Shown here one piece after another: positions 37,361 through 63,700 of a stretch of 64,000 nt of DNA. The translations under genes and the position numbers were made by a program. The stretch spans positions 16,926,001 through 16,990,000 of the forward strand of contig OZ365113.1 of NCBI GenBank assembly GCA_977030845.1. The letters are read 5' to 3'. Every line of letters starts with the position of its first letter. Positions within the stretch are counted from its first letter, which is position 1. The DNA comes from Fimbriosthenelais zetlandica (lineage: Eukaryota). Under the pieces are notes generated by a model that was not told where the DNA came from, did not search any database, and saw nothing but the letters and a program-made list of their open reading frames with translations.

Positions 37361-40300
37361 TCCCCAAAGCAGACAAGTCATACCCGAATTGAATTCAAGG
37401 GGAATGTTTTGGAATACAAAATCTATTGCCTCGCAGCCTCCTATACATATATACATATGGACTTGCTGATGAGGAATGTAGGCCGATGGCAGTCAAATCA
37501 GGGGTGTTTTTTTTAACTTAACTCTGTTATATCAGGCTACAGAGAAGCACACTGCATGAGCTAATGTGACAAGACCCCGAGAGACTTGTTTTCTATTCTG
37601 GCAGCAATATCCTGAATCTTGTCCCCGGGAAAAGGGGACGCATTAAAAAAACATCACTGAAAGCTTTCCATCAAACAGGAGCTTTGGTGTAGGGGAGGAG
37701 CCTGATAATTTTGAGCCAGAGACATTTGTATCTAGCCCTAGCTTAGCGAGCAAACACTGGCCATCCACTTTTTCACCAGTTGCTCGGGGCAGGCAGGCCT
37801 TTCATCGCAAAACATCCTCTAGCCCGGAGCAGCCTTGGGACGTATCGCTCTTTTAAGCGAATGATAGCAGCCAGCCGTTGACAGGTGGTTGGCTCAAATT
37901 GACCGTTTGATCTTAATGCAGGGCCTTGCTGTCAATCAGTTACAGCAAACTCAGCTTTATGTGAGGGCCTGTGAGAGAGCCAAGGCAGTACTTTTAGTCT
38001 TACAGTCTTTTACTAGATCTGGCTCAAGGAGAGAACAGTCCTCGGAACACCCTGCAGGCTAATTTGCTAAAGTTCTCCTGGTACCATGCTGTGGTCTCAA
38101 CGATGCCATTTCACACTCTTCAGGAAATGCTAAGGAGATGGATGTCTTGATGTTTTGGCTTCGGTGCTAATGCTTTTGCCAAAGGCAGACTCGCACTGGA
38201 TAATTAAAGTAGAATTGAAGGGAGGTGTTAGCGATTTCCATTTCTGGGATATCAAATGTCAGTGGAAATCCCCTATGCCAGATCATTCCATACTTGATGG
38301 AAATGGATTAGTCTTCACAAAAATCTTTCTGATTAAAGAAGGCTTATGATGATAAATTCCAATGGTTCTAGGAAGTAGTGAAATGTAATACATTGTCAGG
38401 CTGAGTGCTTGGAGACATCAGAGGGCTTTTACGTTTCCTACATATATAACTTGAGTATGTACATGATAAAGGCTGGAGGAAAAAATGAAGAATAATAAAT
38501 CATTTTTCAAAACCCGCAGGATAAGTAGGCCTCAGGTCCAATTCAGATCTTTATCATGTATCACACAGGAGGCTGAGGAATAAAAAGCACACCCTGGCCC
38601 GGGGTTATATTACTATATTCATGCAGGTCTGCCAGCCCTGCTATAAAACCTGCAGCATTCATCGTGTTAATATTCTAGAAAATTATCACCACCATTAACG
38701 TCAAACTCTCGTATAGTAAATCAAACTATGAAACACGAGGAAAAATGTCAGGGGTGGATGCTCCCATAAATAAGAACATACAAAAGAACATTAAAAAATG
38801 AGCCAGCTAATATAACCACACACTCCTGGATATTTGACTCCCCCATCCAGTTACTTGTCATATTTTCAGTGATATAAAATCTAACATATATCAACACCAT
38901 GCACAAAAACTATTTTTCCTATTAGTAAATAGGTTACTTAACATATAATATTACAGAAATACTATAATAAAATGTGAACCGCAAACTTATGCTAGCCATT
39001 TTCTGGCTTTCAACATTACAAAAAAACTCGATATCAACCCAGCTTCCATTCCCGATATTTCATGATCTTTGCACGCTAGATGCCCCTGGTTATGTTCCAG
39101 GCAAATAATGGCCAAGCCCATGCAATCTTATCCAATTTATGAAATTGAATCCTATAGATTAGACTGTCCCAATCTAGACTGCCCATCATGTGCACGCATA
39201 CTCATAAATCTACATCATAGTGGACGTCTCACAATGATTAGTGGAAAATCAATGCCCTTAATGTGCCTTGGGGGCTTTCTTCCAACTCTCATTCAAAGGG
39301 GTCAAGACACGAATGTTGGAAAAGTTACAAAAGAGATTTATAATGCAACCTCTTATATTCTGGAATGCTCCTAATAATAATATAGGAAGGATCAATAGAG
39401 ATCTACGCTCCAAGAGTAAAGGCTTTTCGTAACATCTCTTCACTATCGATCATATGCTGTTCGATCCTTGCCATATTTGCTCAGTGGAGATGACTTTCCC
39501 TAGTCACACTCCCCACATAAACAGATTACATGCACACACAGGGTGTAAACAATGCCTTTGTTACATCATTGATTGCCGATAAATGAATTCTGCCTTACGC
39601 CTAATACCTCTTGTTTATTCTTGCAGGGCCCACGATGGGATGTGGATGGAAACTCCTTCATGAGGCATAAAATATTTCAACTCATCCATAAGGGAACGAA
39701 GATAAAAACAGCTTTGCCTGGCAGAGTTAATATGTTTGGCTATTGCCCATTGCCAAGATAGAGGATTGAGATACATACATGCTGTATGTAATGGACATAG
39801 AAAACAGGGAACTTCTTGATGTATATATCTTTCAGCAAGGGATACCCAATATCAGCCAAGCAATAATGAATATCTAGATTGATCTCACAGAAGCTTCGAT
39901 TATTCATGATTTTTCTCTTCACGGAAAGGGGGAGAGATACATTTGGAATGTGGATGGATCTTGGATATAGGGGTGGATGACAAGGGCTGATACCATGAAT
40001 CAATTCCCATAACAAGTGTAAACACTCGCCAGCATCTCCTCAAAAAAAATACTCTCAACTCGACAAGCACATCTCCACACAGACAGACTACTTCCAACTC
40101 CACAGAGATTCATTTTAGATTGGAGAGCCAGCAAGAGAAGTAAATGAGGGGGGAAAAAGAACCCTCACCCTCAATGGGACATGTTTTGAAAATTAATGTC
40201 ACCCCATGGGAATCGATAGAACAGAGAGATACTGCTGGATCCCATCTTGGGAGGAAATGATATTTCAGTGGAGGAGTTGTCACTGGTGAGGTTTTGCTGA

Positions 40301-41081
40301 TTGATTAGGAGCCGTGGTGGTGTGCCTGCCAATGAGGCACGTGGAGAAGATTGCGGATACGTCTCCAACAGGGCTCCAGTCAATTGTCTGCAATTGGTGA
40401 CTGGCTGCTGACTAGTGAAGCCTTGTACCACGGGGAGGTGTTAGTTATTAGCGATTCCAAGCACACATACGTGTTTTTTGTTCCATCTGAAGCAGGGTCC
40501 GTGTCAGACTGATCCTCTGGATCTTCCGGATCCCTGGGGACTTGCCAGGCATTGAGATGCACTGCGGTGGATCCCACACGGCGTGAATGACGTGTCGCGA
40601 ATGCCACACCCGAGTCTATCCTACATCATACATACAGATTCAGGGAGAGAAAAAGGAGCGGCGTGATGGAGCAATATCCAATTTATCCATGATTTATCAT
40701 CACGATATCCATTAATCCAGATCATACAATAAAGGTTAGCACCCCGGGGTATGGGAAAATAAATATATCACGTTTATACTCCAAGATAGTCCAGCATCTG
40801 AATTTCTGAACCTCGCCCCAGTCTCACCTAGTGTCAAATATCTCACACACTGATCAAAATCAGGACCCACTGGGAAATCAGGATGATAAAGACTGGTCCC
40901 ATGGCTGGTCTGTAACTAAATTCCATGGTCGAAAAGGAAAGGGTGCTCATCTGGGTCGGATTTCTTTTATCTGAAGACTGGGGCTAATCAAAGGAAATGA
41001 AGGGAAAAAGCTTTCCTTTTACAGCTGACAGGAGAATATTAGGGGAGGAAAATTAATAGTGAAGCAGCGTAAGAAGTGGCA

Positions 41082-43298
41082 ATGTCTTCACGAGAGAGGA
41101 TGTTATTCTTCCCACCACAGCTGTGTTTTAACAACTGTGCCGCTTTGATGAGGATCATCATGGGAGGCTGGTGGTGGCTTTTATTATGGGCAGGCTTAAC
41201 ATCCACATTACCAAAGGTGAAAGGTGAGCTAGGCGAACTCATCCCGTGGAATGCCACTTGTCCCATTAAGTGTATTTGCAGTATAAGGACCTCTGATGTA
41301 TTGCCTGATAGACATGCTCTGTACAGGACAGCTGACTGTACTAATAGAAAGCTTCAATCCTTGCCATCAAACATGCCTCATGATACAGAGGTGCTCTTAT
41401 TAAGGGGGAATGGTATCATGGCTTTTCACGAGCATCTCCCGTTCCTGGACCATCTCAGACAGGTTGACTTATCACATAACAATATTGGTACACTAGGCAT
41501 CCACCCTACCTTTGAGAACCTCACCCACATGCTGAGTCTTAACCTCGGCTATAATCAGCTCAGAGCTTTATTGCATGAAACTTTCAGAGGTCTGACAGGC
41601 CTGAGGGAGCTAAGGCTCAGACATAACCACATTCACTCCATAGAGGACCATAGTTTTGATGGCCTTAAGTCCCTGGAAGTGCTCGATCTTACAGGCAATG
41701 AGCTGCTCTCAGTGAGCCAACACTGGTTCGAGGCACTCCCGAACTTACAAGAGCTCATACTTGACGACAACCGTATAAAAACGTTGATTAACAGTCCATT
41801 CCAACCGTTAAAAAAACTCTCCAAGCTTTCGCTCCGGGCAAACTTTTTGCAAGGTCTAGACAAAGCCACATTCAGAGGTCTTGAATCCTTACAGATATTG
41901 GACATGAATTATAACAGGTTTGAAAAAGTTCCTTCAAGAGCTTTCACAATATTCAAAAGGCTCAAGTTCCTATCTTTAGATGGTAATCCAGTTGATTCTT
42001 TAGATGGCAGGGATTTCCATGATTTTGCTGTAAGTGAAATAAGCATGAATTTCCTCCCGGACTTGGAGCTGGTGGACAGGGAATCATTCTCTAATCTCCC
42101 AGAGTTGACAACCCTCCAACTTCATGACAACCCTAGGCTGGCTTTCATCGATGTCGAGGCCTTTGTCAACCTCCCTAAGCTGAAGACTTTGTATGTCCAT
42201 AACAACCATCTCCAGGCTCTACCGCAGAGCCTGCTGGAATCCCTGCCAAGCTTGAAGATGGTGTCTTTCTATAACAACCCCATCCGCTGTGACTGCAACA
42301 GCTACTTTATCAAGCTGCTGATCAACAACACCCAATTACCTGACACTTCCATCCATTTCTTAAAACCCACCAAACTCAAGTGTGATTCCCCTCCAGCACT
42401 TAGCAACCAGCTCCTGCAGGATGTGGCACTGGAGGACTTGCCAGTGACCTGTCCCCCAACAGCAGTCCCCTTCTTCAATGATAGCTACCAACGAGAGCTC
42501 GGTGACTCGATCAAGTATGAGTGTCGAGCGATAGGCGTCACCCAGCCCCATATTCACTGGATTCTTTCTAATGGAAAGGCTGTGAATAACACTTCCAACT
42601 TCAGTCGGGTGAGGCTCAGTGCTAAAGGTAGTCTGGAAATCCAGCATCTGAAACCAATAGATGCAGGCACGTACACATGTGTCGCCACTGACGAGTATGG
42701 TTACGACACAATATCAACAGTGCTTCGCATACACAGCAGCAACATTCATATTTTACACAAAGGGGTGGCAACCAACTTCATTACGGTTACCTGGAATGGA
42801 ACAGACTCGACGATAAGTACCAGTGATTATCTCATAATGTATCGAGAACATGGGTCAGAAGACGACTATAGCATGATACATCTAAAGCCTTATATGAGAG
42901 CTTACACCATCACGAACCTACTACCAGAGACAACTTACGAGTTCTGTATAGCCTACGAACACATGGAGCAGATAGCTAAGCTCCACTGTACTGACATTAA
43001 AACCAAGCATAGGATGTACGTGATGGCTGGCATAAAGACAGTAGGCAATATGGCAGTTGTCATCCCAGTGACAGTCACGCTATCATTTATCGTCTTATTC
43101 TGTGTCGGGGTCACAGCGATGAAACGCTGGCGCCGGAGAAAAGCTTATAAGGAACCTGAGGGGGTCACAATAACTCCTAATGCAGGTGCCCCTAAGATGG
43201 GAAACATGTCTCAGATTCCTTTAGATAATCTTTACCATCCACCATCTACACCCATCTGTACTTCGCGTACGTCGCTCATTGGACACAGCAATGCATGA
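41082..43298 (+). CDS. LRRN: Leucine-rich repeat neuronal protein (LRRN/NLRR family): signal peptide, LRRNT, ~13 LRRs, LRRCT, Ig, FN3, TM, cytoplasmic tail; single coding exon; nested antisense in an IMMP2L intron
   Basis: Open ORF to TGA at 43298. First ATG is 41082 (the track start 41076 is GTG); the likely start is ATG 41148 or 41160, just before the hydrophobic WWWLLLWAGL signal. Motifs: LRRNT CPIKCIC...ADC, repeated LxxLxLxxN, LRRCT NPIRCDC, Ig ECRAIG...HW...DAGTYTCVA, FN3 ITVTWN...LLPETTYEFC, TM VVIPVTVTLSFIVLFCVGVTAM followed by KRWRRRK, tail LDNLYHPP (cf. vertebrate LRRN LNELYPP). Confidence 0.92.
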   Translation: MSSRERMLFFPPQLCFNNCAALMRIIMGGWWWLLLWAGLTSTLPKVKGELGELIPWNATCPIKCICSIRTSDVLPDRHALYRTADCTNRKLQSLPSNMPHDTEVLLLRGNGIMAFHEHLPFLDHLRQVDLSHNNIGTLGIHPTFENLTHMLSLNLGYNQLRALLHETFRGLTGLRELRLRHNHIHSIEDHSFDGLKSLEVLDLTGNELLSVSQHWFEALPNLQELILDDNRIKTLINSPFQPLKKLSKLSLRANFLQGLDKATFRGLESLQILDMNYNRFEKVPSRAFTIFKRLKFLSLDGNPVDSLDGRDFHDFAVSEISMNFLPDLELVDRESFSNLPELTTLQLHDNPRLAFIDVEAFVNLPKLKTLYVHNNHLQALPQSLLESLPSLKMVSFYNNPIRCDCNSYFIKLLINNTQLPDTSIHFLKPTKLKCDSPPALSNQLLQDVALEDLPVTCPPTAVPFFNDSYQRELGDSIKYECRAIGVTQPHIHWILSNGKAVNNTSNFSRVRLSAKGSLEIQHLKPIDAGTYTCVATDEYGYDTISTVLRIHSSNIHILHKGVATNFITVTWNGTDSTISTSDYLIMYREHGSEDDYSMIHLKPYMRAYTITNLLPETTYEFCIAYEHMEQIAKLHCTDIKTKHRMYVMAGIKTVGNMAVVIPVTVTLSFIVLFCVGVTAMKRWRRRKAYKEPEGVTITPNAGAPKMGNMSQIPLDNLYHPPSTPICTSRTSLIGHSNA

Positions 43299-44366
43299 CC
43301 CACGTTGGACCCCTCCGCTGCATCTGGAGAGGTCGATTATGAAGCCGTGAATTAAAGAAAAAGACACATATTGTACACTCCCTGTGTTGATATAGCAAAG
43401 TAAGGGAGATGTACGAAGTGAATTACCAATGTGATATTACACTGTAGTTAGATTAGCAAGCAATGGTTCTGAATCAGAAGAAAGCTATGTGATTGCTTGT
43501 CACATTTAAATTATAACTTAGCAATAGTGAAAGATAACACTAATTCTATCTCACTCTATTCATTTCCAGCTCACATCAATTCCCTTAATAAATCATGACA
43601 ATTCAATATAGTCTACTGGTACTTAAAGAATTCATCCATCATAAATGAGGTTGGTTCCTATTCCATCCAATCTGTACAGCAGTTCATCTTCAGAATGAAG
43701 AATCTTGTCTCAATGCTTGTAGAGCAGTATTTTCAGTATGATGTATATAAACCCAGATTATTCAATCGTTTCAAAATTATGCAATGACTAATTGGAAAAC
43801 GTGTGTATATATTTGGCTGCAATCTATATATCAAGTTGTATTCAAAATGGAACTAAAACCGCTAGGAAATAGGGGTAAAAAATATACTGGACCACGGCGC
43901 GTGTGGAACCAAAAGATCCCCTACTATTTCCACTTCATGAAAAATGATGGTGATATATACCCTAATGAAATCAATCACCTTTTCAACACAATTCTGTTAA
44001 ACTAAATTCAAACTCTATAGATTTATGTAAATGTGAATACAAGAGTGTCTTCATCAAAGCCTAACTTGTACATATGTCAGGGTATTGAATTAACCGTACA
44101 TGGAACCGCATGTGGACCGCATATCATGAACCATGATATGATTTGAGTGTACATTTCTGAACGTGTATATATACAACTATATATATATAATATAAGCACA
44201 GCATTATAATGTACATGTAGCCTCAAGTTCTTAGAAGTATACAACTTCAAAGCTCTATATTTTCTTTGTCCAAAATCTGTCTCGGTGAGACTAGATGTCT
44301 AGATAAAAAGATAATCTAGTTAACTGCTATCATGTACAATTAATAAAGCACACTGAATTGTGCGCC

Positions 44367-44625
44367 ATGAAAATGTGACAATAAAAAGTATCTGCCTACG
44401 TCAAATTTGCTCCTCCAATAATGAGTTTACATTTGTGACAATCTAGTTATTGTGTAAAAATAAAGTGATAACACCAAGATGTATGTAACAAGATGAAAAT
44501 GTGACATTAAAAATGATATACCTACGTCACCTCCGTGTTTCAATTAATGACTTTATATTACAATTTTCCCCAGAATGGGAAATTAGAGTTTTTTTGGGGG
44601 AAATTAGAGCTTTTGGGAAAAGTAA
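44367..44625 (+). repeat. Short local duplications: ~45-bp imperfect direct repeat (period 126) and GGGAAATTAGAG x2 plus a partial third copy
   Basis: ATGAAAATGTGACA...CCTACGTCA occurs at 44367-44403 and 44493-44529; GGGAAATTAGAG occurs at 44577 and 44598, with GGGAAAAG at ~44615. Confidence 0.7.
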
Positions 44626-44899
44626 CAAAGAAATAATTTCGCTAGATGGCACCAGCTTACACGCCATTTAGCCACAGACAGTTATATTGGATACCACAAG
44701 AGGGCTCAATGTACCACGTGTAATAAGGAAACAGAACTGGATACTTTCCCACATGCACCAATATGGTGTAGTTATTATTTCCTTTGGATATACGCTTCCT
44801 ATTCCCAATACAGAGACTCAACTACTACAAAACTGCATCAACATTCTGGGCTACTCTGGAATTAATAGACCTGTGTATTATAATTAAATATTTACTTAC

Positions 44900-45003
44900 G
44901 CTAAAGAGACGACCTCTCCACGCTCAAATTTGTAGTCTCTGATGCTCCAACGATCCAGCAAGACATAGTCAACTCCTTTCTGGACATCAGGGTTTAGAGC
45001 AGG
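44900..45003 (-). CDS. IMMP2L: IMMP2L second coding exon (104 nt)
   Basis: attccag|PALNPDVQKGVDYVLLDRWSIRDYKFERGEVVSL GC|gtaagt matches IMMP2L PSLNP...DVVLLNHW...RGDIVSLV. Phase 0 in, phase 2 out; joins in frame with 48868-48978. I did not find the downstream exons (IKRVIALEGD, WVEGD) in the window. Confidence 0.9.
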
Positions 45004-46337
45004 CTGGAATAAAATCAGTGAAATCAAAATGAAATAAAAATGTATATTATAATTAACTCATCGTCAATTTTAGGTGAGCGCTTCTAATTAAGATTTGCAC
45101 TAATTGCTATAATATTATTTTAGGGAGAGCAGACTTTAACTGCTACAATGTTCTCGTGTAATGCAATGTTATGCTGCAATTATTTGAGTTGTTGGAAATA
45201 CCCTTGAATTATAAAACATCTGTATACATGATCCTGAATAGGTTTGACATGAATCAGACATGCCTGTGTTCCGCTCCACTTGGCAGGCTTAGCAAGGCCA
45301 TTACTTAGCAACTCTCCGTTGGCCAACACTTGGCAGGTAAGTGGTTTTACCCCTTACCCCACCACCACGAACCAAGCCCCCGACATGGTTATATGAATTA
45401 ATGCCTTCCAGAGGCATGTCTTCTAAGAACCATGAATCAGAGGCCTTATATTATCTCATACGGTGTTTGTATGAACACACCTATCTTTTATTGTGTACAG
45501 TGGACTGGGCTACCGGATCTCATAGGTCTACATGGTTTAATAACAGATCAGTTATATTCTATTATAAGACGCCAAGTTAGACAAATGTTGAGAATATTTC
45601 TTCTTGTATACTCAAAATTGGGGTAGAATTGACAATAGTGAATACGGGTCCCCCTTCATTCTCACTACCACACCAACCACACACCCTCGTCTCTCCACAT
45701 CATGGGTCCCCGTCCTGTCCCCATTGCTTTTATGACCTCGACCTCTTTCAAATCGGAGCACTCTATTTAAGTTATACCACCCGAGCATTAAGTGACATAC
45801 TCAACCCGATAGAATGTGGGTAGGGCGAAGGAGCAGGGGGTGTGGGGGCTTGCCCCCACATTATAAAGAAAGAAGGAATAATATAATTAAACCAAAATTG
45901 TTAGGAAGTGAATGAATGAATGTATTTATCATTTTTGAAAATAAGATATTTCTATTATTAGGTAGCTGGAGCACACAGCCTAAAATAAACAAATATGCCT
46001 TTTGCATGGGAGGAAAGTCATCATTGGGGTATGGGGGTTGGGGGGAATTAACTGTGGGTTTAGCAACTGAAATGGTGGTTTTACCCGCTTGTGTCTATAC
46101 ATAATATAACATAGATTATATCCTGGAACTCGTGGAAGGATCTGGGCAATCCCCACCATGATCAAACCGGTGATCATATTAGAAAGATTGACCTACTGTT
46201 TTCCATCCTGTTTAGCATTCATTCATTCAGTATTCATTCACCTGCACGAGGGTTCGACTTCTATCTTATTTAAAGTACACTGACAGAACTTTTATTCCAG
46301 CAAATCACCTTGTACTCACATCTGTGAATCCATCACT

Positions 46338-48501
46338 ATGGGTCAGGAATGGTCTCGGCGTGTTGCAGGTGACTGCCCAGAGAGGATCTACACACCAGCT
46401 GAGACAATACACTTTATCAGAGTGAGTGAATGAAACCCAAGCTGTTTTAAATGTTGCTAAGGAATGTGAATAATTTCAGACGTTTTATTTGAATTATATC
46501 GCGTGTAGATTCTGAGCCAAGTTGAAAAATGATTTTGATTAATATTCCAGGAGTTGATGAAGCTTGATCAGCAGTATACCCAGTGTGTAGAAAATGGTGT
46601 TTATAGTTTTCTCGCATTCCGCATGGCTGATATGGGTAAATCAGAAGAGGTACGTCAGGCAGTGTCAAACCCAGAATATGTAAGGATGGCTGGGAGCTGT
46701 GCTGAGGGTGCAGCCATCTGTCGGTGGTTCAGGACTGGTATTCCTGATATTGAATTGGACATAAACTACCAGGTGAGCTTTTAATGCTTGACAGTCAGCA
46801 TGACAGTACCTACTTGTGAATCATATATATGCTCTTTTATAGCGTTGCCTCACTGAGGTATCAGTTGCATGCACATTACATGATTCCTCGCCCAGTCACA
46901 TTATCCTGACACCAGGCCGACCATTCACAGCACTGTCCCGTTAATGCCAAGTGAGGGAGCTACTAACTAATTTTTAGGTCTAAGTCTTTGGTTGTAATTT
47001 GAACTGTGATTGCTTTCTACCTGTACCAGAAATCTTGCCTATAGGCTAGGCCTACCCCTTTAGGTCTCATCATTTTGACTCTCTACTTCATTCATAATCC
47101 ATTCATTCAGATCTGTTCCTATTATCATAAACATGTCGATATTTCAGGTAGGAATCATATCTGCCGAGCAGGAAAAAAGGATATTGGAAGAAATTCCTGA
47201 AAAGCCTGGTTTTTTGAAAATCTACAACTCAAGGGAAACTTATGACTGTCTCCATCCACTCCTACGTCGTGCCCGCCCAGAGCTGAGCCAACAGTTCAAT
47301 ACGGGGACTTCTGACCAGACGTTTATCAACACGATCAGCATGCAGGATGATATATCTGCTATTTGGCCACACATGGATGGTGATAACGTTATTGGAAAGA
47401 TTAGTGCACTATTGATGGGTGTGGATGAATCGCTCATTGGTCAAATTCTAAAAGAAGAGGTGGTAGGTCCGTCAAACATGATGGAACTGGTAATCACACT
47501 GCGTGATGAGCCGGCCATTGCCTACTCCGCAGACAGTGTACTCACTCTCAAAGTGGAAAAACCGCCAGATGTCTTTAAACCCAGTCTTGAGAGAATACAG
47601 AAGTTCCTCTCTCCTGCTCTCATGCAAGAGTTACGACAGGCTTATACAGAAATTGTACCTAAGAAATCCCCTGGGGCAACAACAGAGGAGGAATGGAGGA
47701 GGTCCACCACACACCTGGAACATATCCTTATGAAGACTTGGAAGGAAGATGGAAATGACCAGAAAATGGTGTGCTACTTCACATTGAAGTCTCTCTACTA
47801 TCGCTACATCAGAGGTAGTATTTCATTACCATTATCTTAACACATGTCATATCAATTTAACCAAGAAATTCCCTTAATTTGCTGGTGGTGCCTGGTGGCC
47901 CAAAGTTATTTAGCGCATACATGTATCACAATAAGAAGCTTGGTTCAAAATGTTTCCATTCATGGATGGTTCTAGAACAAGTAACAAGGAGTATCTTTCT
48001 GATGCAGGTATAGTCGTGCAGGACAAGTACATTAGTTCCTATGCGGTGAAGACGGAGATGCTTTGGTTGGTGGAGGAGTTACCACCATCTGAATGGACAG
48101 ACGCCAATTTCCTGAAGAATATTAAGCGAGTTTTTCAGCTCCTTCTTGATGACTTGAAGAGAGGAAACATCAAGAATTACTTCATCCCGGAAATGAATGT
48201 CATTGACCACCAGGAGTACTCAGATAAACTCATCAGAGAAGTCATTGTAAAGCTCGAAGAGTTGACAAATCACCTTGAGGCTTTCATGCCATGTGACTTG
48301 GAGAAGATGGTGAAACAGGGTGAAGCGATTGTGTCAGGAATGAATGCCATTTTGATTATCATTAAATATATGAAAACCAAAGCAGATCTCAAACGAAGCC
48401 GCACTCGGCAAGATCCTCTAGCTGGGGCAGCTGAGTTCATACAGATGCTCGATGGAGCAGGGGTCAATGTACCTCACTTTCTCCAAGGTTTCTTCAAGTG
48501 A
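46338..48501 (+). CDS. cGAS-like receptor (cGLR) / Mab-21 family nucleotidyltransferase, 4 coding exons, 488 aa
   Basis: Exons 46338-46421 (MGQEWS...HFIR|gtgagt), 46551-46772 (ttccag|ELMK...INYQ|gtgagc), 47148-47814 (tttcag|VGII...YIR G|gtagta) and 48008-48501 (gatgcag|GT ATA...FFK*). Phases 0/0/1 are consistent; total 1467 nt. Nucleotidyltransferase motifs: GS (46692), E-x-D (46752, 46758) and a third Asp (47532, SADSV). Mab-21 motifs: PGFLKI, WRRSTTHLEHIL, SSYAVKTEMLW, YFIPEMNVI. Confidence 0.88.
46880..47015 (-). mobile_element. Decayed tRNA-derived SINE fragment (antisense) in cGLR intron 2
   Basis: CAGTCACATTATCCTGACACCAGGCCGA...TTAATGCCAAG...AAGTCTTTGGTT resembles, from memory, the antisense strand of SINEs widespread in marine invertebrates. 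The family is not assignable without a search. Confidence 0.4.
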
Positions 48502-48867
48502 ATAAATTAATCAAGCGATGCGAGACCGATGCGGACAAAGGGTGTTGTCTATTGTAGATTTTTCAAGATTTAGCTTAGGTACCGTAATTTGAAGTGATTC
48601 TACATAATTATAGGGCCTACCGATAGCTATCTTTTAAATTCATTCCATATTTTTTTTCTATAATATGGGGTTGAGGGGTTTGCAGGAGGGTGAAGGGTTC
48701 TTTTCCTTAAGGGGGTTCGTGAGAAATGCCACTTTTCTAGAGATAATAAAGGGTTTATAAATGTTGGCCCACCTAATGACATATTAGTTTACTTATTTTT
48801 CTTCAGTTTTAACAAAGACTAAAGGCTAAGCCTGGGATCTACTCAATCAATCAGTGAATCAATTTAC

Positions 48868-48978
48868 CTGCATCGAAGCTCCTTCAACTTTGGCAACGTA
48901 TCCGAAAAGATCGAGGCATGTCACAGTCACAGGGACCACAAAGCCCACAGTACCGACAACTACTCGCCATGTAGTCAT
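48868..48978 (-). CDS. IMMP2L: IMMP2L first coding exon (mitochondrial inner membrane protease subunit 2, peptidase S26)
   Basis: Translates as MTTWRVVVGTVGFVVPVTVTCLDLFGYVAKVEGASMQ|gtaaat, matching IMMP2L VPVAVTFLDRVACVARVEGASMQ including the catalytic Ser. Phase-0 donor. Absent from the ORF track. Confidence 0.9.
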
Positions 48979-49420
48979 ATTAAATATCGGCAAAGTTGCC
49001 TACAACGTTCTTCAGTCTCACTCAACATCCATCAGCCCGCAGCCTGAAATATACAATACATGCATGGTAAATGAATGAATGAAACTGACTCAGTCTCAGA
49101 GAGTGGACGGTGGTGATGACACGTCGGGAAACTGAACAATTTAACTTCAAACTAATGATGACACTTGAATAATATATAGGCCTACTTGGTTCACTTTTTC
49201 TTCTGTTTACTTGGTGCCTTTCATTCAGAAAATACAGGACCCTCCCGGGGCACGCCCACCCCAATGTTTATTGTTATGGCCATGAGGTGGGCCGGTATAC
49301 GCGCGATCAACGACCTCAGTGCTTCAACCAGTACATAAGGTTTAATCTAGGCCTAGCCTATGTCATTTCGAAATTTCTATACAAAAGAATAACACTAAAG
49401 GTACTTAACATGTTACCTAC

Positions 49421-49520
49421 CTCAATCACGACACACGCCGCTGAGTAAATCCGGGGATTTCCTTTTCTTGTCATTCACAGCACGTGTAGTCGACCCAGCC
49501 ACCCGGCAGCCGCCATGACA
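49421..49520 (-). promoter_or_regulatory. Probable IMMP2L non-coding first exon / promoter-proximal CpG-rich segment
   Basis: Minus-strand donor gag|gtaggt at 49421/49420 and candidate acceptor tatttcag| at 49044/49043 ahead of the ATG exon. The segment is locally CpG-rich and has a YY1-like ATGGCGGC on the minus strand at ~49510-49517. The left boundary is read from the donor; the right boundary is approximate. Confidence 0.45.
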
Positions 49521-51733
49521 CCTCGTTAAGCAAATGCAAAATTATCACCATAAATAAATAAATAACGTGTTAATCATTCTTATACAATAGAAAATGATTC
49601 TAATAAATTAGTTTTACATTTAACTACTCATAATGCAGATAATTGTTTAGAAAATACCTGAAAATTACTGTTTTTCATTTACGAGGCAAACGCAGATTCT
49701 GGGGCCAATTGCTGAATTGAAACTAGGTCCATAGACTCAATAAGTGGTGCGGTATAATAAAACCTCCGCCAAAAGAAAGTAGTCTCAGCTTTGGCGCTCT
49801 GATCCCGTGGCTATCTACAGCACTTCATGATAGTCTTAACAAGCAGCTATACTTTATGAATTTCGATTATAAAAATAAATACATAGAACCAAGGATAGGT
49901 GCCCCAAACAAATTTTATTGTGACAATCGATGAATCTCTACAAAGGAGTTGATTCATTTCATCATGAATTCATTATTCAGCAATACCTTAGGCTGAGGTG
50001 AAGCGATGTCATGTTAGTCATATTTAACACATCAAACAAAATATGATTCTTTGCAACTACCGTACACATTAAGCGACAATTTAAATATATCATATGAAAC
50101 AAATACCGGTACCGGTACATACATGTACAGGTACGGTACTATGTAGTCTAGTGAAGCACCATCCATCGGACCAAGAACATTGCCCACATATATCTGTAGG
50201 GTGCACGCCTCTTCCATTATTCCATAAGGGCCTAAGCTTACACTCAAATCAAATTAATTAATTATTTCATTGTTATTATAGATGTATCTGACGTGGACCA
50301 TGGACAAAAATAATTCAAATAATATCGGCGAAAAATACCAACGCCTAATTAAGTAGGCCTACCATTATCACAACCTTCACATACAGGTTACCATATTAAT
50401 TCGCAGAAGTGTTTTCACAATAATCTGACAACACAAAATTGAATATAAATACTCATAGGAAGTACCGATAGACATCAATTTAATTCCTCAAGTTCTATTA
50501 ATTCTGTTCGAAAATAAAAGCTTTATAATTATGACATTCCCAACGTTCTACTGATTATTACCGTTTCGAGCAATTTTTGTCATACGATACTTTAATGCAT
50601 TATAATATGCATCAATATTATATGTAACAATCTTTAAAACTTCGGCAACCTGATACTGCATTTCTCATGCATAATGATGCCAATAATTATGTATGGGCCT
50701 ATAATTTACATATATACACGATCTCAGAACATCGATATTTATCATACTAATTATGATTCATACACACAGGATGAAAGGCTGTGATTCCTGCCACAGGAAA
50801 AGCCCTCGAGATAATAATAGAAATAATTAGTCTCCGAAATGTTTAACGAAAGACAATCTACAACAGACACAGGTCTACGACCAACTAAGTTTTGATTCTG
50901 GGCTTGATCATCAAACTTGTACAGATACAACAAAGAAAAGTGCAACAGTATTTTGACATAAAATACAAATACCAATATTAAGCATGTATGATGTAATGTA
51001 AGAAGTAGTAGAACTAGTCTGCAATTCGGTTTAAAAAACGGCATCCAGATAGAAAATTTAAGCAAAAGAATCTTATGTACAAAAAGCAAATCTGGGTCCT
51101 ATGTAGGGCTACCGGCAACAGGAATATTAAGGAATGTCCCAATTTAATCATTGTATTGTATATTTAAAAAAAATTACATTAAATAAGCAATGCGAAAAAG
51201 AGACAGGTCCCCACTCCATATGCATCAGAGATCATGCATGTAATGTAGTAGAAATACTTTGCGTCGGGAATGTTCAAGTAAAGGGCAAAAAGGACATCCC
51301 TTGATTTCTTCTATGTATATCACAATTATAAGCAACATTTCCAATATTTCTCAAACTATGCATGTTTTTTTTTCTGACGGATCACTACAATTCAACGCTA
51401 TTGCACTTGGTATCAATATTCTAGAATATATATGCATTAACATTCAAGATAGAAAATTCACAGAACTATATTATCACTGAGCTTTATCATTATATCCGTC
51501 TCTAATTTTTAGAGAAAGTAGATGTTACCAGATTCAGGTAGCATCATTTTGGTTACTTGCCACAGCAGTAATTTTTGACAATTTTTGTTAAACCTTCAGG
51601 ATGCTTTGTAATTAGCATCACCATATCTGCTTCTATCATTAAGTTATTATGCCTCAAAAGTAAGACGTCTAACGGAGAAATACTTGAGGCCTCACCCTTG
51701 ACGCTAAGTCTTTATGACTGTCTCTCTGAATTT

Positions 51734-54700
51734 CTAGAATTTATGAAGGCGACTCATGGCCTCGGATGCCTTGATCCGCACCTCAGGCGAAGTGTCTTTC
51801 AGCAACATGACCAGAGCTGGAAATATAAACCAAACAATCATCTACACACATCAAACATACAAATTTGTCATACCTTTCCTATAATATCCATAATTATCGC
51901 TAAATCATTCTTTTTTTTTAGGTTTGTGTAAAAAAAAAAATCAAAAAAAAAATCGATCTACCTGAGCAGACATGTTCCTTGGACACCTCGCCATACTGTT
52001 CTGTAGGGGTGTTACCAAGGAGGAAACCAACAAACATGGCGGCGTTCGACTTGATCTCACTCCACGTGCTCCGGAAGTACGTCACATTCCCCATGACGTA
52101 AAAATTCAGTTTGTCAGGGAAGTCCACAACCTGAAACAAATGAAATAAAATGTTTAAAATTACAACTATTTGTAGACATCCCTGATATCTATATAGGTAA
52201 GCTCACGGTCATGAGGAAAATGAAACAATAATGTTATAACAATCAGTAAAGATTTATTTTTTCAAAACTTATATGGAAGGAGTACTCACGATGGCCTTGG
52301 CCAAGTCGTTCATGAATTCTCCATAGTGAAGTGTAGACCCCTCGCGTAGATGTTTCTGGAACATGTTGTTGATGGTGTCTGACCCTATCAGTGGACCAAG
52401 CAGCCTCAACGAGTACTTACAGGCCTGAGGAGAAATCAACAGTCTCATAAATCCTCACCAAATATATTCTAAAATGTTTGTAAAATTCTAAAAGTAAAAG
52501 TTAGTACAGGAGTTATGGGTCTACTACTTACAGTGCGAACCTCCATGTCTGGGTCGTTTAGGTGGAGTAGGAGACTGACAAAGTTGGTGTGGATCTGCTC
52601 CAGGAAGGGCGCCTTAGAAGGACCATCACCAAACCGTGACAGGTTACCGAAGAGAGTGAAGGCAGCTGCACGTACAGCAGCCTTCTCCTGTAAGGAATCA
52701 ACAGGTTTAGTATAATTTAGAAAAACGATTTAAACAAAAAATAGGCCCAAACATTAGAAAATAGCAAAAATAGTCAAACCAAGAGAAAAATAATAAAATT
52801 CTGGATAAATTTCAGAGAGAATCTGACCTTCTCAAAGCAGGGTCTGATTCGGAGTGCTATATTGATGAGGATAGCACGGATGTGACTCTCATCAATCTGG
52901 GCGAGGATACGTGAGAGACCACTCATAGCCTCCAGTGTGATATCATCCTCCAAATCCTCCTTATCATCCATACCGGCCATCATGGCTGACAGCACGGTGG
53001 TCGAGTGACGCTGGACCTGCTCAGATGTACAAGTGATAACTATTCAACCAACAAGGATTCTCTTTGAAATCAAGGGCCAAAATGTTAAATGGAAGGCTGC
53101 TCCAAGTTTGCTATCTGTATATTAAGTAATCTTTCATTACCGGTACTTTGGAATTACATGTATAGGCCTAGGCCTACATTGATAGAGGTGGGTGAACCTC
53201 ATCAAATGCTATTCTTGATCAAGGAAGTAATAATAATTGTGTTGTTTCATAGGCCTACTAGTATTCTTTAACCATGCACGTATAAAATGATTGAAATTTA
53301 GTCTGAATGACTCAGTATGTAAATGAGTGTAATTTGGCAATTTTTGCAACGGAAATCCACAGAAATGGAAAATATTGAAAGGAATTTTCAATGAAAAGCA
53401 GGGTATAATGGAGCAAATGAATTGGCACAACAGAAAAATGTCAGAATAAACAATTCAACACAATGCAATGGGGGGAAATTGTGACAAAGTATAACACTCC
53501 AGTGTTTATGAGTTCATCAAAAAAGGTTTTAGGCCTAACATATTGGCAAAATTATATAGGGCCTACGTAACGTACTAGTACCCAGGTCGTTTCTTTTAAG
53601 AATCCAAAACATTATTCCGAGGGCACCAGTAGGACAGTCAAGATTCCCGGAATTAGCCTACATTTATCGCTCTCTAAAATGGAGAGCGCCCTGCATCTCG
53701 GTCGATTTTCCTTGGTCTGGCTATGATACAGTGCAGCCACCTAGTGTTTACCTTGTGCATCGAGAGTGAACTGAGCTCCACCGCGCCTTTACCTCAGCGG
53801 TAAACCACCAGGTGCCTGCACTGTTTCTAGTCGCCGCCATCAGCCGAGTGCCCAAGGCCAAGCCGGTTAATGCCGGCGTCGCTAGGAATTTTCAGATGGC
53901 GTATGTAGATCTATTAAAGCACCTAAATCGGCCAGAATTGAAATCAGTTGGTAAATTTACATGGAAAATCTATTTCATCCAAAAGAACAGAGCTACGCTG
54001 CCTGTAAACCTGTAAAGGCGAGAGAAATTGGAAGTGAGCGATAATAGGGGTTTTGGCAGATCCCGGCCCAGTGGCTCCCTCGCGATCTATACGGCAAACG
54101 AAGGAACTAAGATATAAGAGAACTTTCTGCCCCATGCGACTACCCCACCACCGGCAAAAGCGGGAACTAATGCTCAATGCTAAGTGAATGGTAGCCATTG
54201 AACATTGAGCGTTAGTTCCCCCTCTTGCCGTATAGCTGTGCTCACAACACTGCTTCCATTCACTCGCCGTTTACAGGTTTTCAGACAGCATACCTCTGTT
54301 CTTTTACATACGATGAATTCTTCTTGAGAATCTACCGACGAATTCCAATTTAGGCTCATTTTGGTGCTTCCAAATATCTGCAAATGCCGTCTGCAAATTC
54401 TGAGCGCGCTCCATTGACTTAGCATTGAGCGTTTGTTCCCGCTTTTGCCGGTGGTGGGGTAGCGTAGTCGCATGGGGCCGAAAGTGACTTACTTTGGGGG
54501 TGCTCTGAAAAAGCTCGCCTAAATTTTGCAGGGCGATGAAAATGAGATTCCGGATATCTTGACTATAATGGGCACCAGAGAGAAAGAGAGAGAGGGGGAG
54601 TTGATTAAGTGATGCAGAAGACAATGATGAGAACAAAATGTTAATGGTCTAATAATAAAAACAAAATTCCTATTGCCTATTTTTAGAGGAAGTCCCGTAG

Positions 54701-60700: not shown

Positions 60701-63700
60701 TTATCATCGACATCTGACCGACTGACCGAATCCTGAATAAAATCCAGACGACATGATTAAGATCACTGCCCGATATTGAAGTGCAATGTATATTTAAGGC
60801 TAGACAAATTTAGGATATCTAACTTGGAATTTTCGATATCATAGAAATTATTTTCAGCTGACCTTTATGAAGCTGAAGAGACCAGAGGAGCGTTTTCCAG
60901 TTTCGTTTTTCCCCACTGACTCAAGTTTGACAAGGACATTATCTAGATGGGCCGCGGCCACAAAGCCCATAGCCATGGCACATCCCTTGAAACAAATTAA
61001 AACAATACAAGTTAGAAAAACTACAACACATAAAGTTGATACAAATATAATTAAGAAAAATACGTAAAAGCAAAAACCGTACCTCTCTCTCGACCTCATT
61101 GGAATGTTTGACATTAGAGAATATGATATCTAGGTGTTTCAAGACAAAGTCTTTCTTGTTGGACTTCCTCATTACGATGCCGAGCGCCTTGAAGGCGAAG
61201 TTTTTCTCCTCGGGTAGACTGGAGTAATGAGGGAGTTGGCGGCCGAGGATATCCCCGAGGCCCTCAGTCCAGTTCTCATCATTGATCTGATCCAGAGTTT
61301 TAGACAGCAGCTGGAAGGCCGATGATATAAGGGTTCACATTTAAGTCTATGTATAAATGTCTGGAAATTTAAACTAATAAAGTATAATTCAAAGACAAAC
61401 CTTTAATACTAAATCTTCCCAATTTTTCTGTGACCATTTCTCTGGCTCTTCCTGGTTTTCCTCGAAATAGTGGACCATTTTTGGAATGACTGTATCCCAG
61501 AGTTCAACAAGCGAGGCGTCAATATTCGGGGATAGGGCACGTAGGGCGTTCAGGACGTGAGCACCTCGGTTACGACCTCCAGTGGGTCTCCCATACATAA
61601 CCTGAAATGCACCAAGATAAATCAGAAGGACTGCTTAATACTTCCAAAAAGGTTCTTTAAAATATTTATTCAAATCAGTTTACCGCATCTCAACAAAATG
61701 ATACAACAACTGGAACCTTGAAGTGTATGCCATTTCTACAAATCATTGTATCACTCAATATTAATCTATGTAACACCAGAGCCCTTAGCTAAAGTAAGGA
61801 GGGTGGGTTTGTAGCAGGATAGGGGTTAGTTTGACAGATCAGTTGGGAGGATGTGGGGTTGGATTGTATGAGAGCAGTTGTAGAGTAGACGGGGCTTGGA
61901 AGGTGGATGGGTATATTAAATTAAGTATAGGAAGTAGACTGAAGTAGTTAGTAGCTATAATGTGTACCTTAAGATTAAAAGGTTGGCCTGACATCACCTA
62001 TATTGAAAATTAAAAAAAATAAAATCTTGAAACTACCAAAAATCACTTATAAAAGATACACAGACCCTAAAATGAATTTTTAAAAAATATTCCCAAAGCA
62101 TACAAAAAACAGCAAATCTTTAAATTATAATAATCTTCGCTTATTTGTGTGTGGGTTAAATTGCTTGAAGTAAATAAACTTATTTTGTCTGCTTACATAT
62201 TCCTAAAATTTAATGAATACTTAAAAGTGGTGCTTCCTAGAACCCAGCAATGTTATTGAGTAAGAACAAGATCGGCTAACATAGTCAAAATATTGTAACC
62301 TATCATAACGTTCTTAAAGAATATATAAATTTTATACTCACAAGTAATCTAGCAAATATCTCCTGGGGTTTAGGAACATTAACTGAAAAAAATGCTTATT
62401 ACATTAATATATATGTTTTTAAAATACACTTTAAACTATGTTGATATGATACCAATTATTAAATCGATCATAATGAAATTGGACAAACACGAGAGGAGAA
62501 CAAAGTTTAGAAACGTATATGAATCTAGTCTGATTCGGGACTCAATCTTACCATCTTCTTCAAAATTAACCATATAATCTGTAGCATTCTCATCTCTCTT
62601 CTTTTGCCCAATACTCGCCACACAACGACAGATAGCTCCCATTGCATCAAAGTATTGTTCCGGGACCAGAAATTCCAAGAGGTAAGGCCACAACACCTAA
62701 ACATAATTGTCATAGTGCAATATAGTTCTAGATGAACAAAATGTCAGATAAGAATTACCAGAGATTAATGTCTTAAATACGTTTAAAAATGAATTTCCTC
62801 TACTTACCGTATCCAAGTCATCCACTGTGGTGCACATCAGCTGTAGCACATTCTCACACATTGAACGCAGAGCTTCATTACTCACATACTCAGGATCGTT
62901 AGGCCGTTTACTCTAAAAGCAATAAACACAGGATCAACCAATGGATGAACAGACAAAATTTTGCTTTAAATGCTTAAATGATTACCAATAAATAAGAAAT
63001 AAAGAAATATAAGGTGAAAGTTTACCTGAGGGTCGTGAGAGACACAGCACTGTCTGGTGATAAACTCAATCATGAGAGGTCCACCATCCAGCTCTAGGTA
63101 ACCATGGTGACTCATAGCCATCACAGTCTGAGCTAACTCCTTCTTTACCTAAAAATACAGTACATAAATACAGTACATAATAACTCATATATTCAATGCT
63201 GAAGTGAGGAAAATTTAAGCAACATGCAATCAATGAAATACACAATAATTCGGATATTTTATCTAAGTAAGGATGGTATCTTCCCAAAATATAATACTAT
63301 TCATCCATTAGATAGGAGAGTGAGAGAGTATGGGGTTATATTTACTTTGTTACTGGTTTCATTGAGGAGTATCTTTAGACCAATGAGGATGTGTTGTTTC
63401 TTGTCTTCCAGCACACTATCAGCACTGTTAATCAGGTGACGGAGGATGGACACAGTAGCTACACGTGTCCTCTCATTGCCTCCCTCTAACTTCTGTAGGA
63501 GATAAGGCACCAGCCTCCCGGAATATGGCTCAGCTGAATAGGAGAATGCGAGGAACCATATAATAAGATAACTACATGTACATGTGTATAAGAAAGGATA
63601 GGAATAAAGAGATTGTATTGAGAGTATACGCACCCAAAGTTGTATAACATCTCAGGAGCTCATTGTGGTTCTTCACAGTCATTGGGTTATTATAATCTAC

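What the first reader, a model, noticed from the sequence alone, without database searches (positions are those of the whole stretch)
44900..48978. cGAS-like receptor nested antisense inside an intron of the mitochondrial peptidase gene IMMP2L
The whole 4-exon cGLR (46338-48501, +) lies between the two IMMP2L coding exons (48868-48978 and 44900-45003, -), in a 3.86-kb intron. Seen in sequence: both gene structures and an intact GS/ExD/D catalytic set. Established: cGAS-like receptors make cyclic dinucleotides in innate immunity, and IMMP2L processes mitochondrial intermembrane-space proteins. Inference: an immune sensor inserted into a conserved housekeeping locus, possibly co-regulated with it or in transcriptional interference. 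I know of no description of this arrangement but could not search. Any functional link to mitochondrial nucleic-acid sensing is speculation.
Basis: partly seen in the sequence, partly recalled or inferred. Interest (0 to 1): 0.8.

Follow-up and report, generated by a model that had tools for sequence, protein, structure and literature searches.

The report
cGAS-like gene inside IMMP2L intron
An intact cGAS-like (Mab-21 family) gene really does sit backwards inside the first coding intron of the mitochondrial peptidase gene IMMP2L, but four related genomes have the same intron empty, so it is most likely an ordinary, lineage-specific nested gene and not a designed immune-mitochondrial pairing.

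Summary
A 4-exon plus-strand gene (46338-48501, all GT-AG, 488 aa) lies wholly in the 3,864-bp intron between two consecutive IMMP2L coding exons on the minus strand (48978-48868 and 45003-44900). It belongs to the Mab-21/cGAS-like family. It has a Pfam Mab-21_C hit, and a profile of its family hits Sp-cGLR1, MB21D2 and cGAS in the PDB. An AlphaFold model of a homolog matches those folds. G76-S77, E96/D98 and D231 are present.

New here: the locus LRRN(+) / IMMP2L exon B(-) / exon A(-) is conserved in four other spiralian genomes, including Owenia fusiformis. The same phase-0 intron there is 539-3,457 bp and holds no Mab-21 trace. One relative keeps its two closest homologs on other contigs. 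The gene therefore entered this intron in the window's own lineage.

Nothing supports a functional link to IMMP2L. Nested antisense genes are common, in the literature and in this scan's notes on this genome. The copy has diverged at 13 of 48 family-conserved positions, so catalytic activity is unproven. No sequencing runs were listed, so the splice junctions have no RNA check.

Verdict: a real, well-dated, ordinary nested gene; a new member of known kinds. This scan has noted other Mab-21 genes and many nested genes elsewhere in this genome.

The parts
48868..48978 (-). IMMP2L first coding exon (exon A): ATG..VEGASMQ, 37 codons, donor gtaaat
   Evidence: It is 74-88% identical to the matching exon in L005, L007, L008 and L009. 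The Atlas lead is Peptidase_S26.
45004..48867 (-). IMMP2L phase-0 intron of 3,864 bp that holds the whole cGLR-like gene
   Evidence: The same intron position is 1099, 539, 1549 and 3457 bp in L005, L007, L008 and L009, with no Mab-21 HMM hit.
44900..45003 (-). IMMP2L second coding exon (exon B): PALNP..EVVSL, acceptor ttccag, donor gtaagt
   Evidence: It is 62-76% identical to the matching exon in four other genomes.
46338..46421 (+). cGLR-like exon 1 (28 codons), starting MGQEWSR
   Evidence: The homologous first exon in L001 starts MGQKWTR; the whole stretch is 47% identical.
46551..46772 (+). cGLR-like exon 2 (74 codons) with G76-S77 and E96-L-D98
47148..47814 (+). cGLR-like exon 3 (222 codons plus 1 nt) with the third catalytic Asp D231, VPKK and WRRSTT
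   Evidence: Pfam Mab-21 NTase E 7e-4, scored as a fragment. phmmer best hit is P0001 at 48% identity, E 3e-45.
48008..48501 (+). cGLR-like exon 4 (Mab-21 C-terminal helical domain plus a helical tail), stop TGA
   Evidence: Pfam Mab-21_C E 2.4e-11, 44.1 bits against a cut-off of 24.1. PDB hits include MB21D2 and cGAS.
48501..48506 (+). AATAAA polyadenylation-type signal overlapping the stop codon, about 360 bp before IMMP2L exon A
   Evidence: Read from the sequence. No transcript data.
41082..43298 (+). Context: single-exon LRRN (LRR-Ig-FN3) gene in the next IMMP2L intron. It anchors the orthology of the locus.
   Evidence: The Owenia host gene is annotated Peptidase_S26 and spans its LRRN.

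Best explanation
A complete, independently transcribed Mab-21/cGAS-like receptor gene was copied or moved into the first coding intron of IMMP2L in the lineage of this spiralian genome. The insertion enlarged an intron that is about 0.5-3.5 kb in relatives to 3.9 kb.

Shown: the gene is intact, the locus is orthologous, and the gene is absent from the same intron in four other genomes.

Inferred: the product is a cytosolic, possibly N-myristoylated, nucleotidyltransferase-type pattern-recognition receptor that makes a nucleotide second messenger when it binds a ligand. It uses its own promoter in the 1.3 kb upstream of its ATG and its own AATAAA signal. Its position inside IMMP2L is an incidental outcome of dispersal of a fast-evolving immune gene family, not a functional coupling.
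For: Gene model with canonical splice sites and an open frame. The junctions are ungapped against homologs.

Mab-21_C is above the Pfam cut-off, and the NTase domain is seen in a fragment. Homologs P0001, P0015 and P0003 pass both Pfam domains.

The family profile hits Sp-cGLR1 (8gjy) at E 4.5e-34, MB21D2 at 2.9e-26 and cGAS at about 1e-15. The third Asp aligns to the cGAS SVD.

The AlphaFold2 model of homolog P0015 has pLDDT 82 and pTM 0.83. Its top Foldseek hits are MB21D2, Sp-cGLR1 and cGAS at probability 1.0.

The order LRRN, exon B, exon A is conserved in L005, L007 (Owenia), L008 and L009, with the same intron position but no Mab-21 relic.

In sample ERZ25767047 the closest homologs sit on other contigs of similar coverage (38x, 40x and 43x).

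No repeat or TE signature flanks the insert, and there is no second copy in the window.

Nested genes are common and usually have their own promoters (PMC3325483). Many are noted in this genome.
Against: No RNA evidence could be obtained, so expression and splicing are unverified.

The closest relative available, L006 (LRRN about 88% identical), ends before the intron. The insertion is therefore dated only against more distant genomes.

The strict cGLR motif fails on spacing: 132 residues between D98 and D231 against the published 50-90, and A instead of Q/T before GS.

The copy has changed 13 of 48 family-conserved positions, clustered at residues 238-270. This could mean a changed or lost activity.

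Loss from four lineages, instead of one gain, is unparsimonious but not formally excluded.
Confidence: 0.75

Rival explanations
1. The nesting is functional. Transcription of the cGLR gene runs towards the IMMP2L first coding exon and promoter, which lie about 0.4-0.8 kb beyond its stop. Immune induction of the sensor would then lower or tune IMMP2L by transcriptional interference, or the two genes would share chromatin control. This would link the sensor to mitochondrial state.
For: The geometry alone. The cGLR stop and AATAAA at 48499-48506 lie about 360 bp from IMMP2L exon A, on the opposite strand. Interference has been proposed for the LRRN3/IMMP2L pair in human (PMC3565204).
Against: The pairing is absent from the same intron in four other genomes, and the closest homologs in a relative are unlinked to IMMP2L. 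Most nested genes are regulated independently of their hosts (PMC3325483). There are no expression data. Papers holding both IMMP2L and cGAS concern mtDNA release in ageing, not gene arrangement.
Confidence: 0.07
2. The nested copy is a drifting or non-catalytic Mab-21 paralog. It would be either a young pseudogene that is still open, or a protein that kept the fold but no longer makes a nucleotide signal.
For: It keeps only 35 of 48 family-conserved positions, against 42/43 for P0001 and 42/44 for P0015. It has lost three conserved Trp, one Pro and the GCH motif between residues 238 and 270. Other Mab-21 genes of this genome were noted as having lost catalytic residues. No transcript evidence exists.
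Against: The 488-codon frame is open across four exons with perfect splice sites. GS, ExD and the third Asp are retained, as are VPK, R-x-S-x-T and SSY at the positions of the cGAS nucleotide-contact residues (the mapping to cGAS is from my own knowledge of cGAS). Two other family members keep a similar share of conserved positions: P0006 72% and P0003 80%.
Confidence: 0.15
3. Assembly artefact: the two IMMP2L exons belong to different copies, or the cGLR segment was mis-joined into the intron.
For: None found. It is only that no reads could be laid on the region.
Against: The window has no N runs. The order and orientation LRRN, exon B, exon A are the same in four independent assemblies. The two exons join in frame at the conserved SMQ|P(A/S)LNP site with matching splice signals.
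Confidence: 0.03

Closest known systems
Animal cGAS-like receptors (cGLRs) as defined by Li et al. 2023 (PMC9980059); closest solved structure is Sp-cGLR1 of Stylophora pistillata (PDB 8gjy), then human MB21D2 (7lt1) and cGAS
   Same: It has a Mab-21 NTase core plus a C-terminal helical domain. The GS loop, the [DE]h[DE] pair and a third acidic residue are present. The family profile hits 8gjy at E 4.5e-34. The predicted fold of a homolog matches over more than 400 columns.
   Different: The subfamily has 132 residues between the ExD pair and the third Asp, against the published 50-90. It has A or S instead of Q/T before GS. It has a helical C-terminal tail and an MGQxW start. The family is small in the databases: 14 phmmer hits at E<=1e-3 among 1.84 billion representatives. 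No activity or ligand is known.
LRRN3 nested in IMMP2L intron 3 in human (PMC3565204, PMC3933685)
   Same: The host gene is the same, and the internal gene lies on the opposite strand, wholly inside an intron. This window also carries an LRRN gene in the intron after the second coding exon.
   Different: The LRRN nest is old: it is present in all five spiralian loci examined and in vertebrates. The cGLR nest lies in the preceding intron and is found only in this genome.
Ordinary opposite-strand nested genes of metazoans (158 in human, about 800 in Drosophila; PMC3325483)
   Same: The whole gene lies within one intron in antisense orientation, apparently with its own promoter and polyadenylation signal.
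   Different: Nothing distinctive, apart from the small size of the host intron (3.9 kb) and the closeness of the nested gene's 3' end to the host's first coding exon.

Membership tests
cGLR (Li et al. 2023, PMC9980059) | Active-site motif h[QT]GS X8-20 [DE]h[DE]h X50-90 h[DE]h | tested here: inconclusive
   The residues are present: G76-S77, then 18 residues, E96-L-D98-I, and A-D231-S. The strict pattern does not match. A stands before GS, and the second spacer is 132 residues. The whole subfamily shares this. The family column holding D231 aligns to the cGAS SVD.
cGLR (Li et al. 2023, PMC9980059) | [quoted passage not shown] | tested here: met
   Exon 4 hits Mab-21_C at E 2.4e-11. Exon 3 hits Mab-21 at E 7e-4 as a fragment. 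The model aligns to P0001's gene over residues 56-449 at E about 2e-108. Homologs pass both Pfam cut-offs.
cGLR (Li et al. 2023, PMC9980059) | Predicted structural homology to known cGLR/CD-NTase enzymes | tested here: met
   Tested by proxy only. The AlphaFold2 model of homolog P0015 (36% identical to the window protein) has pLDDT 82. Foldseek puts MB21D2, Sp-cGLR1 and cGAS at probability 1.0 and TM 0.6-0.69 by target. The spliced window protein itself could not be submitted by reference.
cGLR (Li et al. 2023, PMC9980059) | Ligand-dependent synthesis of a nucleotide second messenger | not testable with these tools
   This needs recombinant protein and an NTP assay.
IMMP2L (mitochondrial inner membrane peptidase subunit 2, peptidase S26) | N-terminal membrane segment followed by the catalytic-serine box G-x-S-M-x-P | tested here: met
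   ..VAKVEGASMQ|PALNP.. runs across the exon A/B junction. The Atlas lead is Peptidase_S26. The likeness to human IMMP2L rather than IMMP1L is from memory of the human sequences.
IMMP2L (mitochondrial inner membrane peptidase subunit 2, peptidase S26) | Catalytic-lysine box and C-terminal S26 boxes | not tested
   The remaining exons are not in the window. No motif hits were found on the minus strand of 1-44900.
IMMP2L (mitochondrial inner membrane peptidase subunit 2, peptidase S26) | Orthologous locus: hosts an LRRN gene in the intron after the second coding exon | tested here: met
   LRRN at 41082-43298. The Owenia host gene is annotated PF10502 and spans its LRRN. Human LRRN3 lies in IMMP2L intron 3 (PMC3565204).
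Nested (intronic, opposite-strand) gene pair | The whole coding region of the inner gene lies within one intron of the host | tested here: met
   46338-48501 lies inside 45004-48867.
Nested (intronic, opposite-strand) gene pair | Both genes transcribed and spliced as modelled | not testable with these tools
   No sequencing run was listed in two searches.

The most novel reading that the evidence does not exclude
The nested gene represents a small, undescribed spiralian subfamily of membrane-anchored cGLRs. These would have an N-myristoylation-type MGQxW(S/T)R start and a roughly 45-80-residue insertion in the NTase core. In this lineage, the gene's placement head-on against the IMMP2L 5' end would let induction of the sensor dampen IMMP2L, tying an innate immune signal to mitochondrial protein processing.
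Probability: 0.05. Interest if true: 0.6.

Novelty: new member of a known kind. Interest (0 to 1): 0.27.

Why it matters
The finding gives a cleanly dated example of a fast-evolving innate-immune gene landing in a short intron of an old housekeeping gene. That host gene already carries one of the most ancient nested genes known, LRRN.

This is useful for annotating the genome and for studies of how nested genes arise. It does not open a new mechanism.

The protein itself would be a reasonable candidate for a biochemical cGLR screen. It is a divergent cGLR-like enzyme with a conserved myristoylation-type start and an enlarged NTase core.

Tried and rejected
1. RNA evidence. Two run searches, one with the whole locus for RNA and one with the gene alone for any kind, listed nothing. 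Read laying was therefore never used.

2. Full-length protein id for the window gene. It is not in the protein collection. A search with P0001 found only P0001 and P0015. A search with the exon-3 ORF found nothing. Pfam, PDB and structure work had to use exon pieces or homologs.

3. Closer relative. L006 (LRRN about 88% identical, 75% at DNA level) ends 1.2 kb after LRRN, before IMMP2L exon B. It cannot date the insertion more finely.

4. TE-mediated capture. No convincing terminal repeats or target duplications flank the insert, and the window holds no other copy of the intron DNA.

5. Non-coding RNAs in or near the intron. No Rfam hit at E<=0.1 in 40000-52000, and no tRNA in the window.

6. 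Further IMMP2L exons in the window. None were found by motif scans.

7. P0018's locus gave no DNA.

8. Single exon pieces against the PDB gave only weak cGAS and MB21D2 hits, plus a chance flagellin match. The family profile was needed.

9. Bacterial-type promoter and terminator scans gave counts at or below those of shuffled sequence, and they do not apply to a eukaryote.
Full report
**1. What is in the sequence**

The window is eukaryotic DNA, about 41% G+C, with no N runs.

On the plus strand, four open segments join through canonical GT-AG introns. The exons are 46338-46421, 46551-46772, 47148-47814 and 48008-48501. The introns are 129, 375 and 193 bp. The coding sequence is 1,467 nt and gives 488 aa with no internal stop. 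An AATAAA overlaps the stop codon at 48501-48506.

On the minus strand there are two IMMP2L exons.
- Exon A runs from an ATG at 48978 to 48868. It reads MTTWRVVVGTVGFVVPVTVTCLDLFGYVAKVEGASMQ and is followed by gtaaat.
- Exon B starts at 45003 after ttccag. It reads PALNPDVQKGVDYVLLDRWSIRDYKFERGEVVSL and ends at 44900 before gtaagt.

Joined, the two exons give the serine box ..EGASMQPALNP.. of a type-I signal-peptidase-like (S26) protease. The intron between them, 45004-48867, is 3,864 bp and contains the whole plus-strand gene.

**2. Identity of the nested gene**

Pfam was run on exon pieces because a spliced protein cannot be passed by reference. It gave Mab-21_C on exon 4 (E 2.4e-11, 44.1 bits against a cut-off of 24.1). 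It gave the Mab-21 nucleotidyltransferase domain on exon 3 as a fragment (E 7e-4).

An exhaustive phmmer search of exon 3 against 1.84 billion representatives found only 14 proteins at E<=1e-3. The best was P0001, at 48% identity and E 3e-45. The hits that were scanned carry the Mab-21 NTase domain above the cut-off, and most also carry Mab-21_C above it.

In a MAFFT alignment of the model with eight homologs, all three exon junctions fall in ungapped, conserved columns..FIR|ELM....NYQ|VGI.. and ..YIRG|IVV... Most of these homologs are encoded without introns at these points. This is good indirect evidence that the splice sites are used as modelled.

A profile of the family hits solved structures:
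- Sp-cGLR1 (8gjy), E 4.5e-34
- MB21D2 (7lt1), E 2.9e-26
- many cGAS chains, about E 1e-15

In these alignments the family's S-x-D column aligns to the SVD of cGAS that carries the third catalytic Asp.

An AlphaFold2 model of the full-length homolog P0015 reached pLDDT 82 and pTM 0.83. P0015 is 36% identical to the window protein. Its best Foldseek matches in the PDB are MB21D2, Sp-cGLR1 and cGAS, at probability 1.0 and with 400-456 aligned columns.

**3. Catalytic residues**

The window protein has G76-S77, E96-L-D98 and D231. It also keeps VPKK, W-R-R-S-T-T and I-S-S-Y, which lie where cGAS has K362, R376/S378/S380 and S434/S435/Y436. That mapping rests on my own knowledge of cGAS, not on a tool.

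Measured against the published curation rule of Li et al. 2023 (PMC9980059; h[QT]GS X8-20 [DE]h[DE]h X50-90 h[DE]h), the residues are there but the strict pattern fails. An Ala precedes GS, and 132 residues separate D98 from D231. The whole subfamily shares this enlarged core.

The window copy is also unusually diverged. It keeps 35 of 48 positions that are at least 85% conserved among the other members. Its nearest relatives P0001 and P0015 keep 42/43 and 42/44. The losses cluster at residues 238-270 and comprise three Trp, one Pro and a G-C-H motif. I therefore file it as a Mab-21/cGAS-like family member with the catalytic residues present. Activity is unproven.

**4. Identity of the host and orthology of the locus**

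A single-exon LRR-Ig-FN3 gene (LRRN, 41082-43298, +) lies 1.6 kb from exon B, inside the next IMMP2L intron. No further IMMP2L exons are found on the minus strand down to position 1. That intron is therefore at least 44.9 kb long. In human, LRRN3 is nested in IMMP2L intron 3 (PMC3565204, PMC3933685).

Searching with the LRRN protein gave an unnamed relative at 90% identity (by tblastn 88%) and two more at 63%. The nearest named protein is from the annelid Owenia fusiformis (45%), and a bivalve protein follows at 33%. The genome is therefore spiralian.

I fetched four of these loci. The same layout was found in each: LRRN (+), then IMMP2L exon B (-), then exon A (-).
- L005: ENA sample ERZ25767047
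- L007: Owenia. An annotated 190-aa Peptidase_S26 gene on the minus strand spans its LRRN.
- L008
- L009

The exon A and B peptides are 62-88% identical to those of the window. This rules out the idea that the two exons belong to different copies or to a chimera.

**5. Dating the nest**

The intron after ..SMQ sits at the identical phase-0 position in all five genomes. Its length is 539 bp in Owenia, 1,099 bp in L005, 1,549 bp in L008 and 3,457 bp in L009, against 3,864 bp here. A family HMM run against all six frames finds the three large exons in the window (E 1e-90, 6e-52 and 5e-28). It finds nothing in the other four introns (best E 0.011 at 5.8 bits).

In sample ERZ25767047, the two closest homologs lie on 0.88-Mb and 1.35-Mb contigs. 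These are P0001 (45% identical over residues 56-449) and P0015. Those contigs have the same coverage class (38x, 40x) as the LRRN/IMMP2L contig (43x, 1.0 Mb). No IMMP2L or LRRN homology lies within 10 kb of either homolog.

The simplest history is a single insertion into this intron in the window's lineage, after its split from the ERZ25767047 organism. The closest relative, L006, ends before the intron, so the date cannot be narrowed. I found no terminal repeats, target-site duplication or repeated DNA that would name the mechanism.

**6. Is the arrangement special?**

I found no paper describing a cGLR in IMMP2L. Papers that mention both IMMP2L and cGAS concern mtDNA release in ageing.

The class of arrangement, however, is ordinary. 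Nested genes number 158 in human and nearly 800 in Drosophila. They mostly have their own promoters and expression patterns, and are regarded as the outcome of a stochastic process (PMC3325483). They are most often antisense to the host (PMC3565204). In this scan, 275 notes on this same genome matched the words 'nested intron antisense'; those listed include other immune-type genes inside introns, and separate notes record other Mab-21 genes.

The lack of conservation of the pairing argues against an ancestral functional link. One geometric point could matter. The nested gene's 3' end lies only about 360 bp from IMMP2L's first coding exon, and the two are transcribed head-on. Read-through could therefore interfere with IMMP2L initiation. 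This is speculation without expression data.

**7. Mechanism, with what is shown and what is inferred**

Shown:
- an intact four-exon Mab-21/cGAS-like gene
- catalytic-type residues present
- nested antisense in an orthologous IMMP2L intron
- absent from that intron in four other genomes

Inferred:
- it is expressed from its own promoter
- it acts as a nucleotidyltransferase-type sensor that makes a cyclic nucleotide signal
- its start, MGQEWSR, is shared as MGQKWTR by the first exon of its closest homolog in L001. It fits an N-myristoylation-type signal, suggesting membrane anchoring
- the nest is incidental

**8. Verdict**

Novelty: a new member of known kinds. Interest is low to moderate.

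Noticed in passing
window 41082-43298 (+); L005:10064-12262, L007:10001-12172, L008:2589-4802, L009:10001-12082: The LRRN gene nested in the IMMP2L intron after the second coding exon is present, in the same order and orientation, in all five spiralian loci examined. It matches the human LRRN3-in-IMMP2L nest. This looks like a very old nested pair, conserved at least between spiralians and vertebrates.
   Followed up: partly
window 46338-46421; L001:8754-8939: The cGLR-like protein starts MGQEWSR, and its closest homolog's first exon starts MGQKWTR. An N-myristoylation-type start (G2, S/T6) is thus conserved between two species. More distant paralogs (P0015, P0003) start differently.
   Followed up: partly
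window 46422-46550, 46773-47147, 47815-48007; L001:8943-9995; L004:10001-11416; L002:909-2237: Intron positions are not shared within this Mab-21 subfamily. The window gene has three introns. The L001 homolog has one, at a different site (KPEE|VRQ, where the window reads straight through GAG GTA CGT). P0015 and P0003 are encoded by single uninterrupted ORFs. This points to intron gain or loss, or to retrocopy history, in the family.
   Followed up: partly
window 47148-47814, protein residues 238-270: A cluster of changes at otherwise conserved family positions lies just after the third catalytic Asp (W to P, W to S, W to F, P to L, GCH to YTE). This may be local accelerated evolution in the nested copy.
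   Followed up: partly
L009:14719-16431 (+) and L009:18133-18908 (+): In one related genome, a 570-aa ORF with no Pfam match lies between LRRN and IMMP2L exon B. Two short ORFs with no Pfam match lie in the 3.5-kb exon A-B intron. IMMP2L introns may have picked up other unrelated inserts in other lineages.
   Followed up: partly
window 63301-63633 (-): An exon-like ORF matches Maestro-type HEAT repeats (PF23210, E 1.6e-13). It is a neighbouring gene upstream of IMMP2L on the same strand.
   Followed up: no
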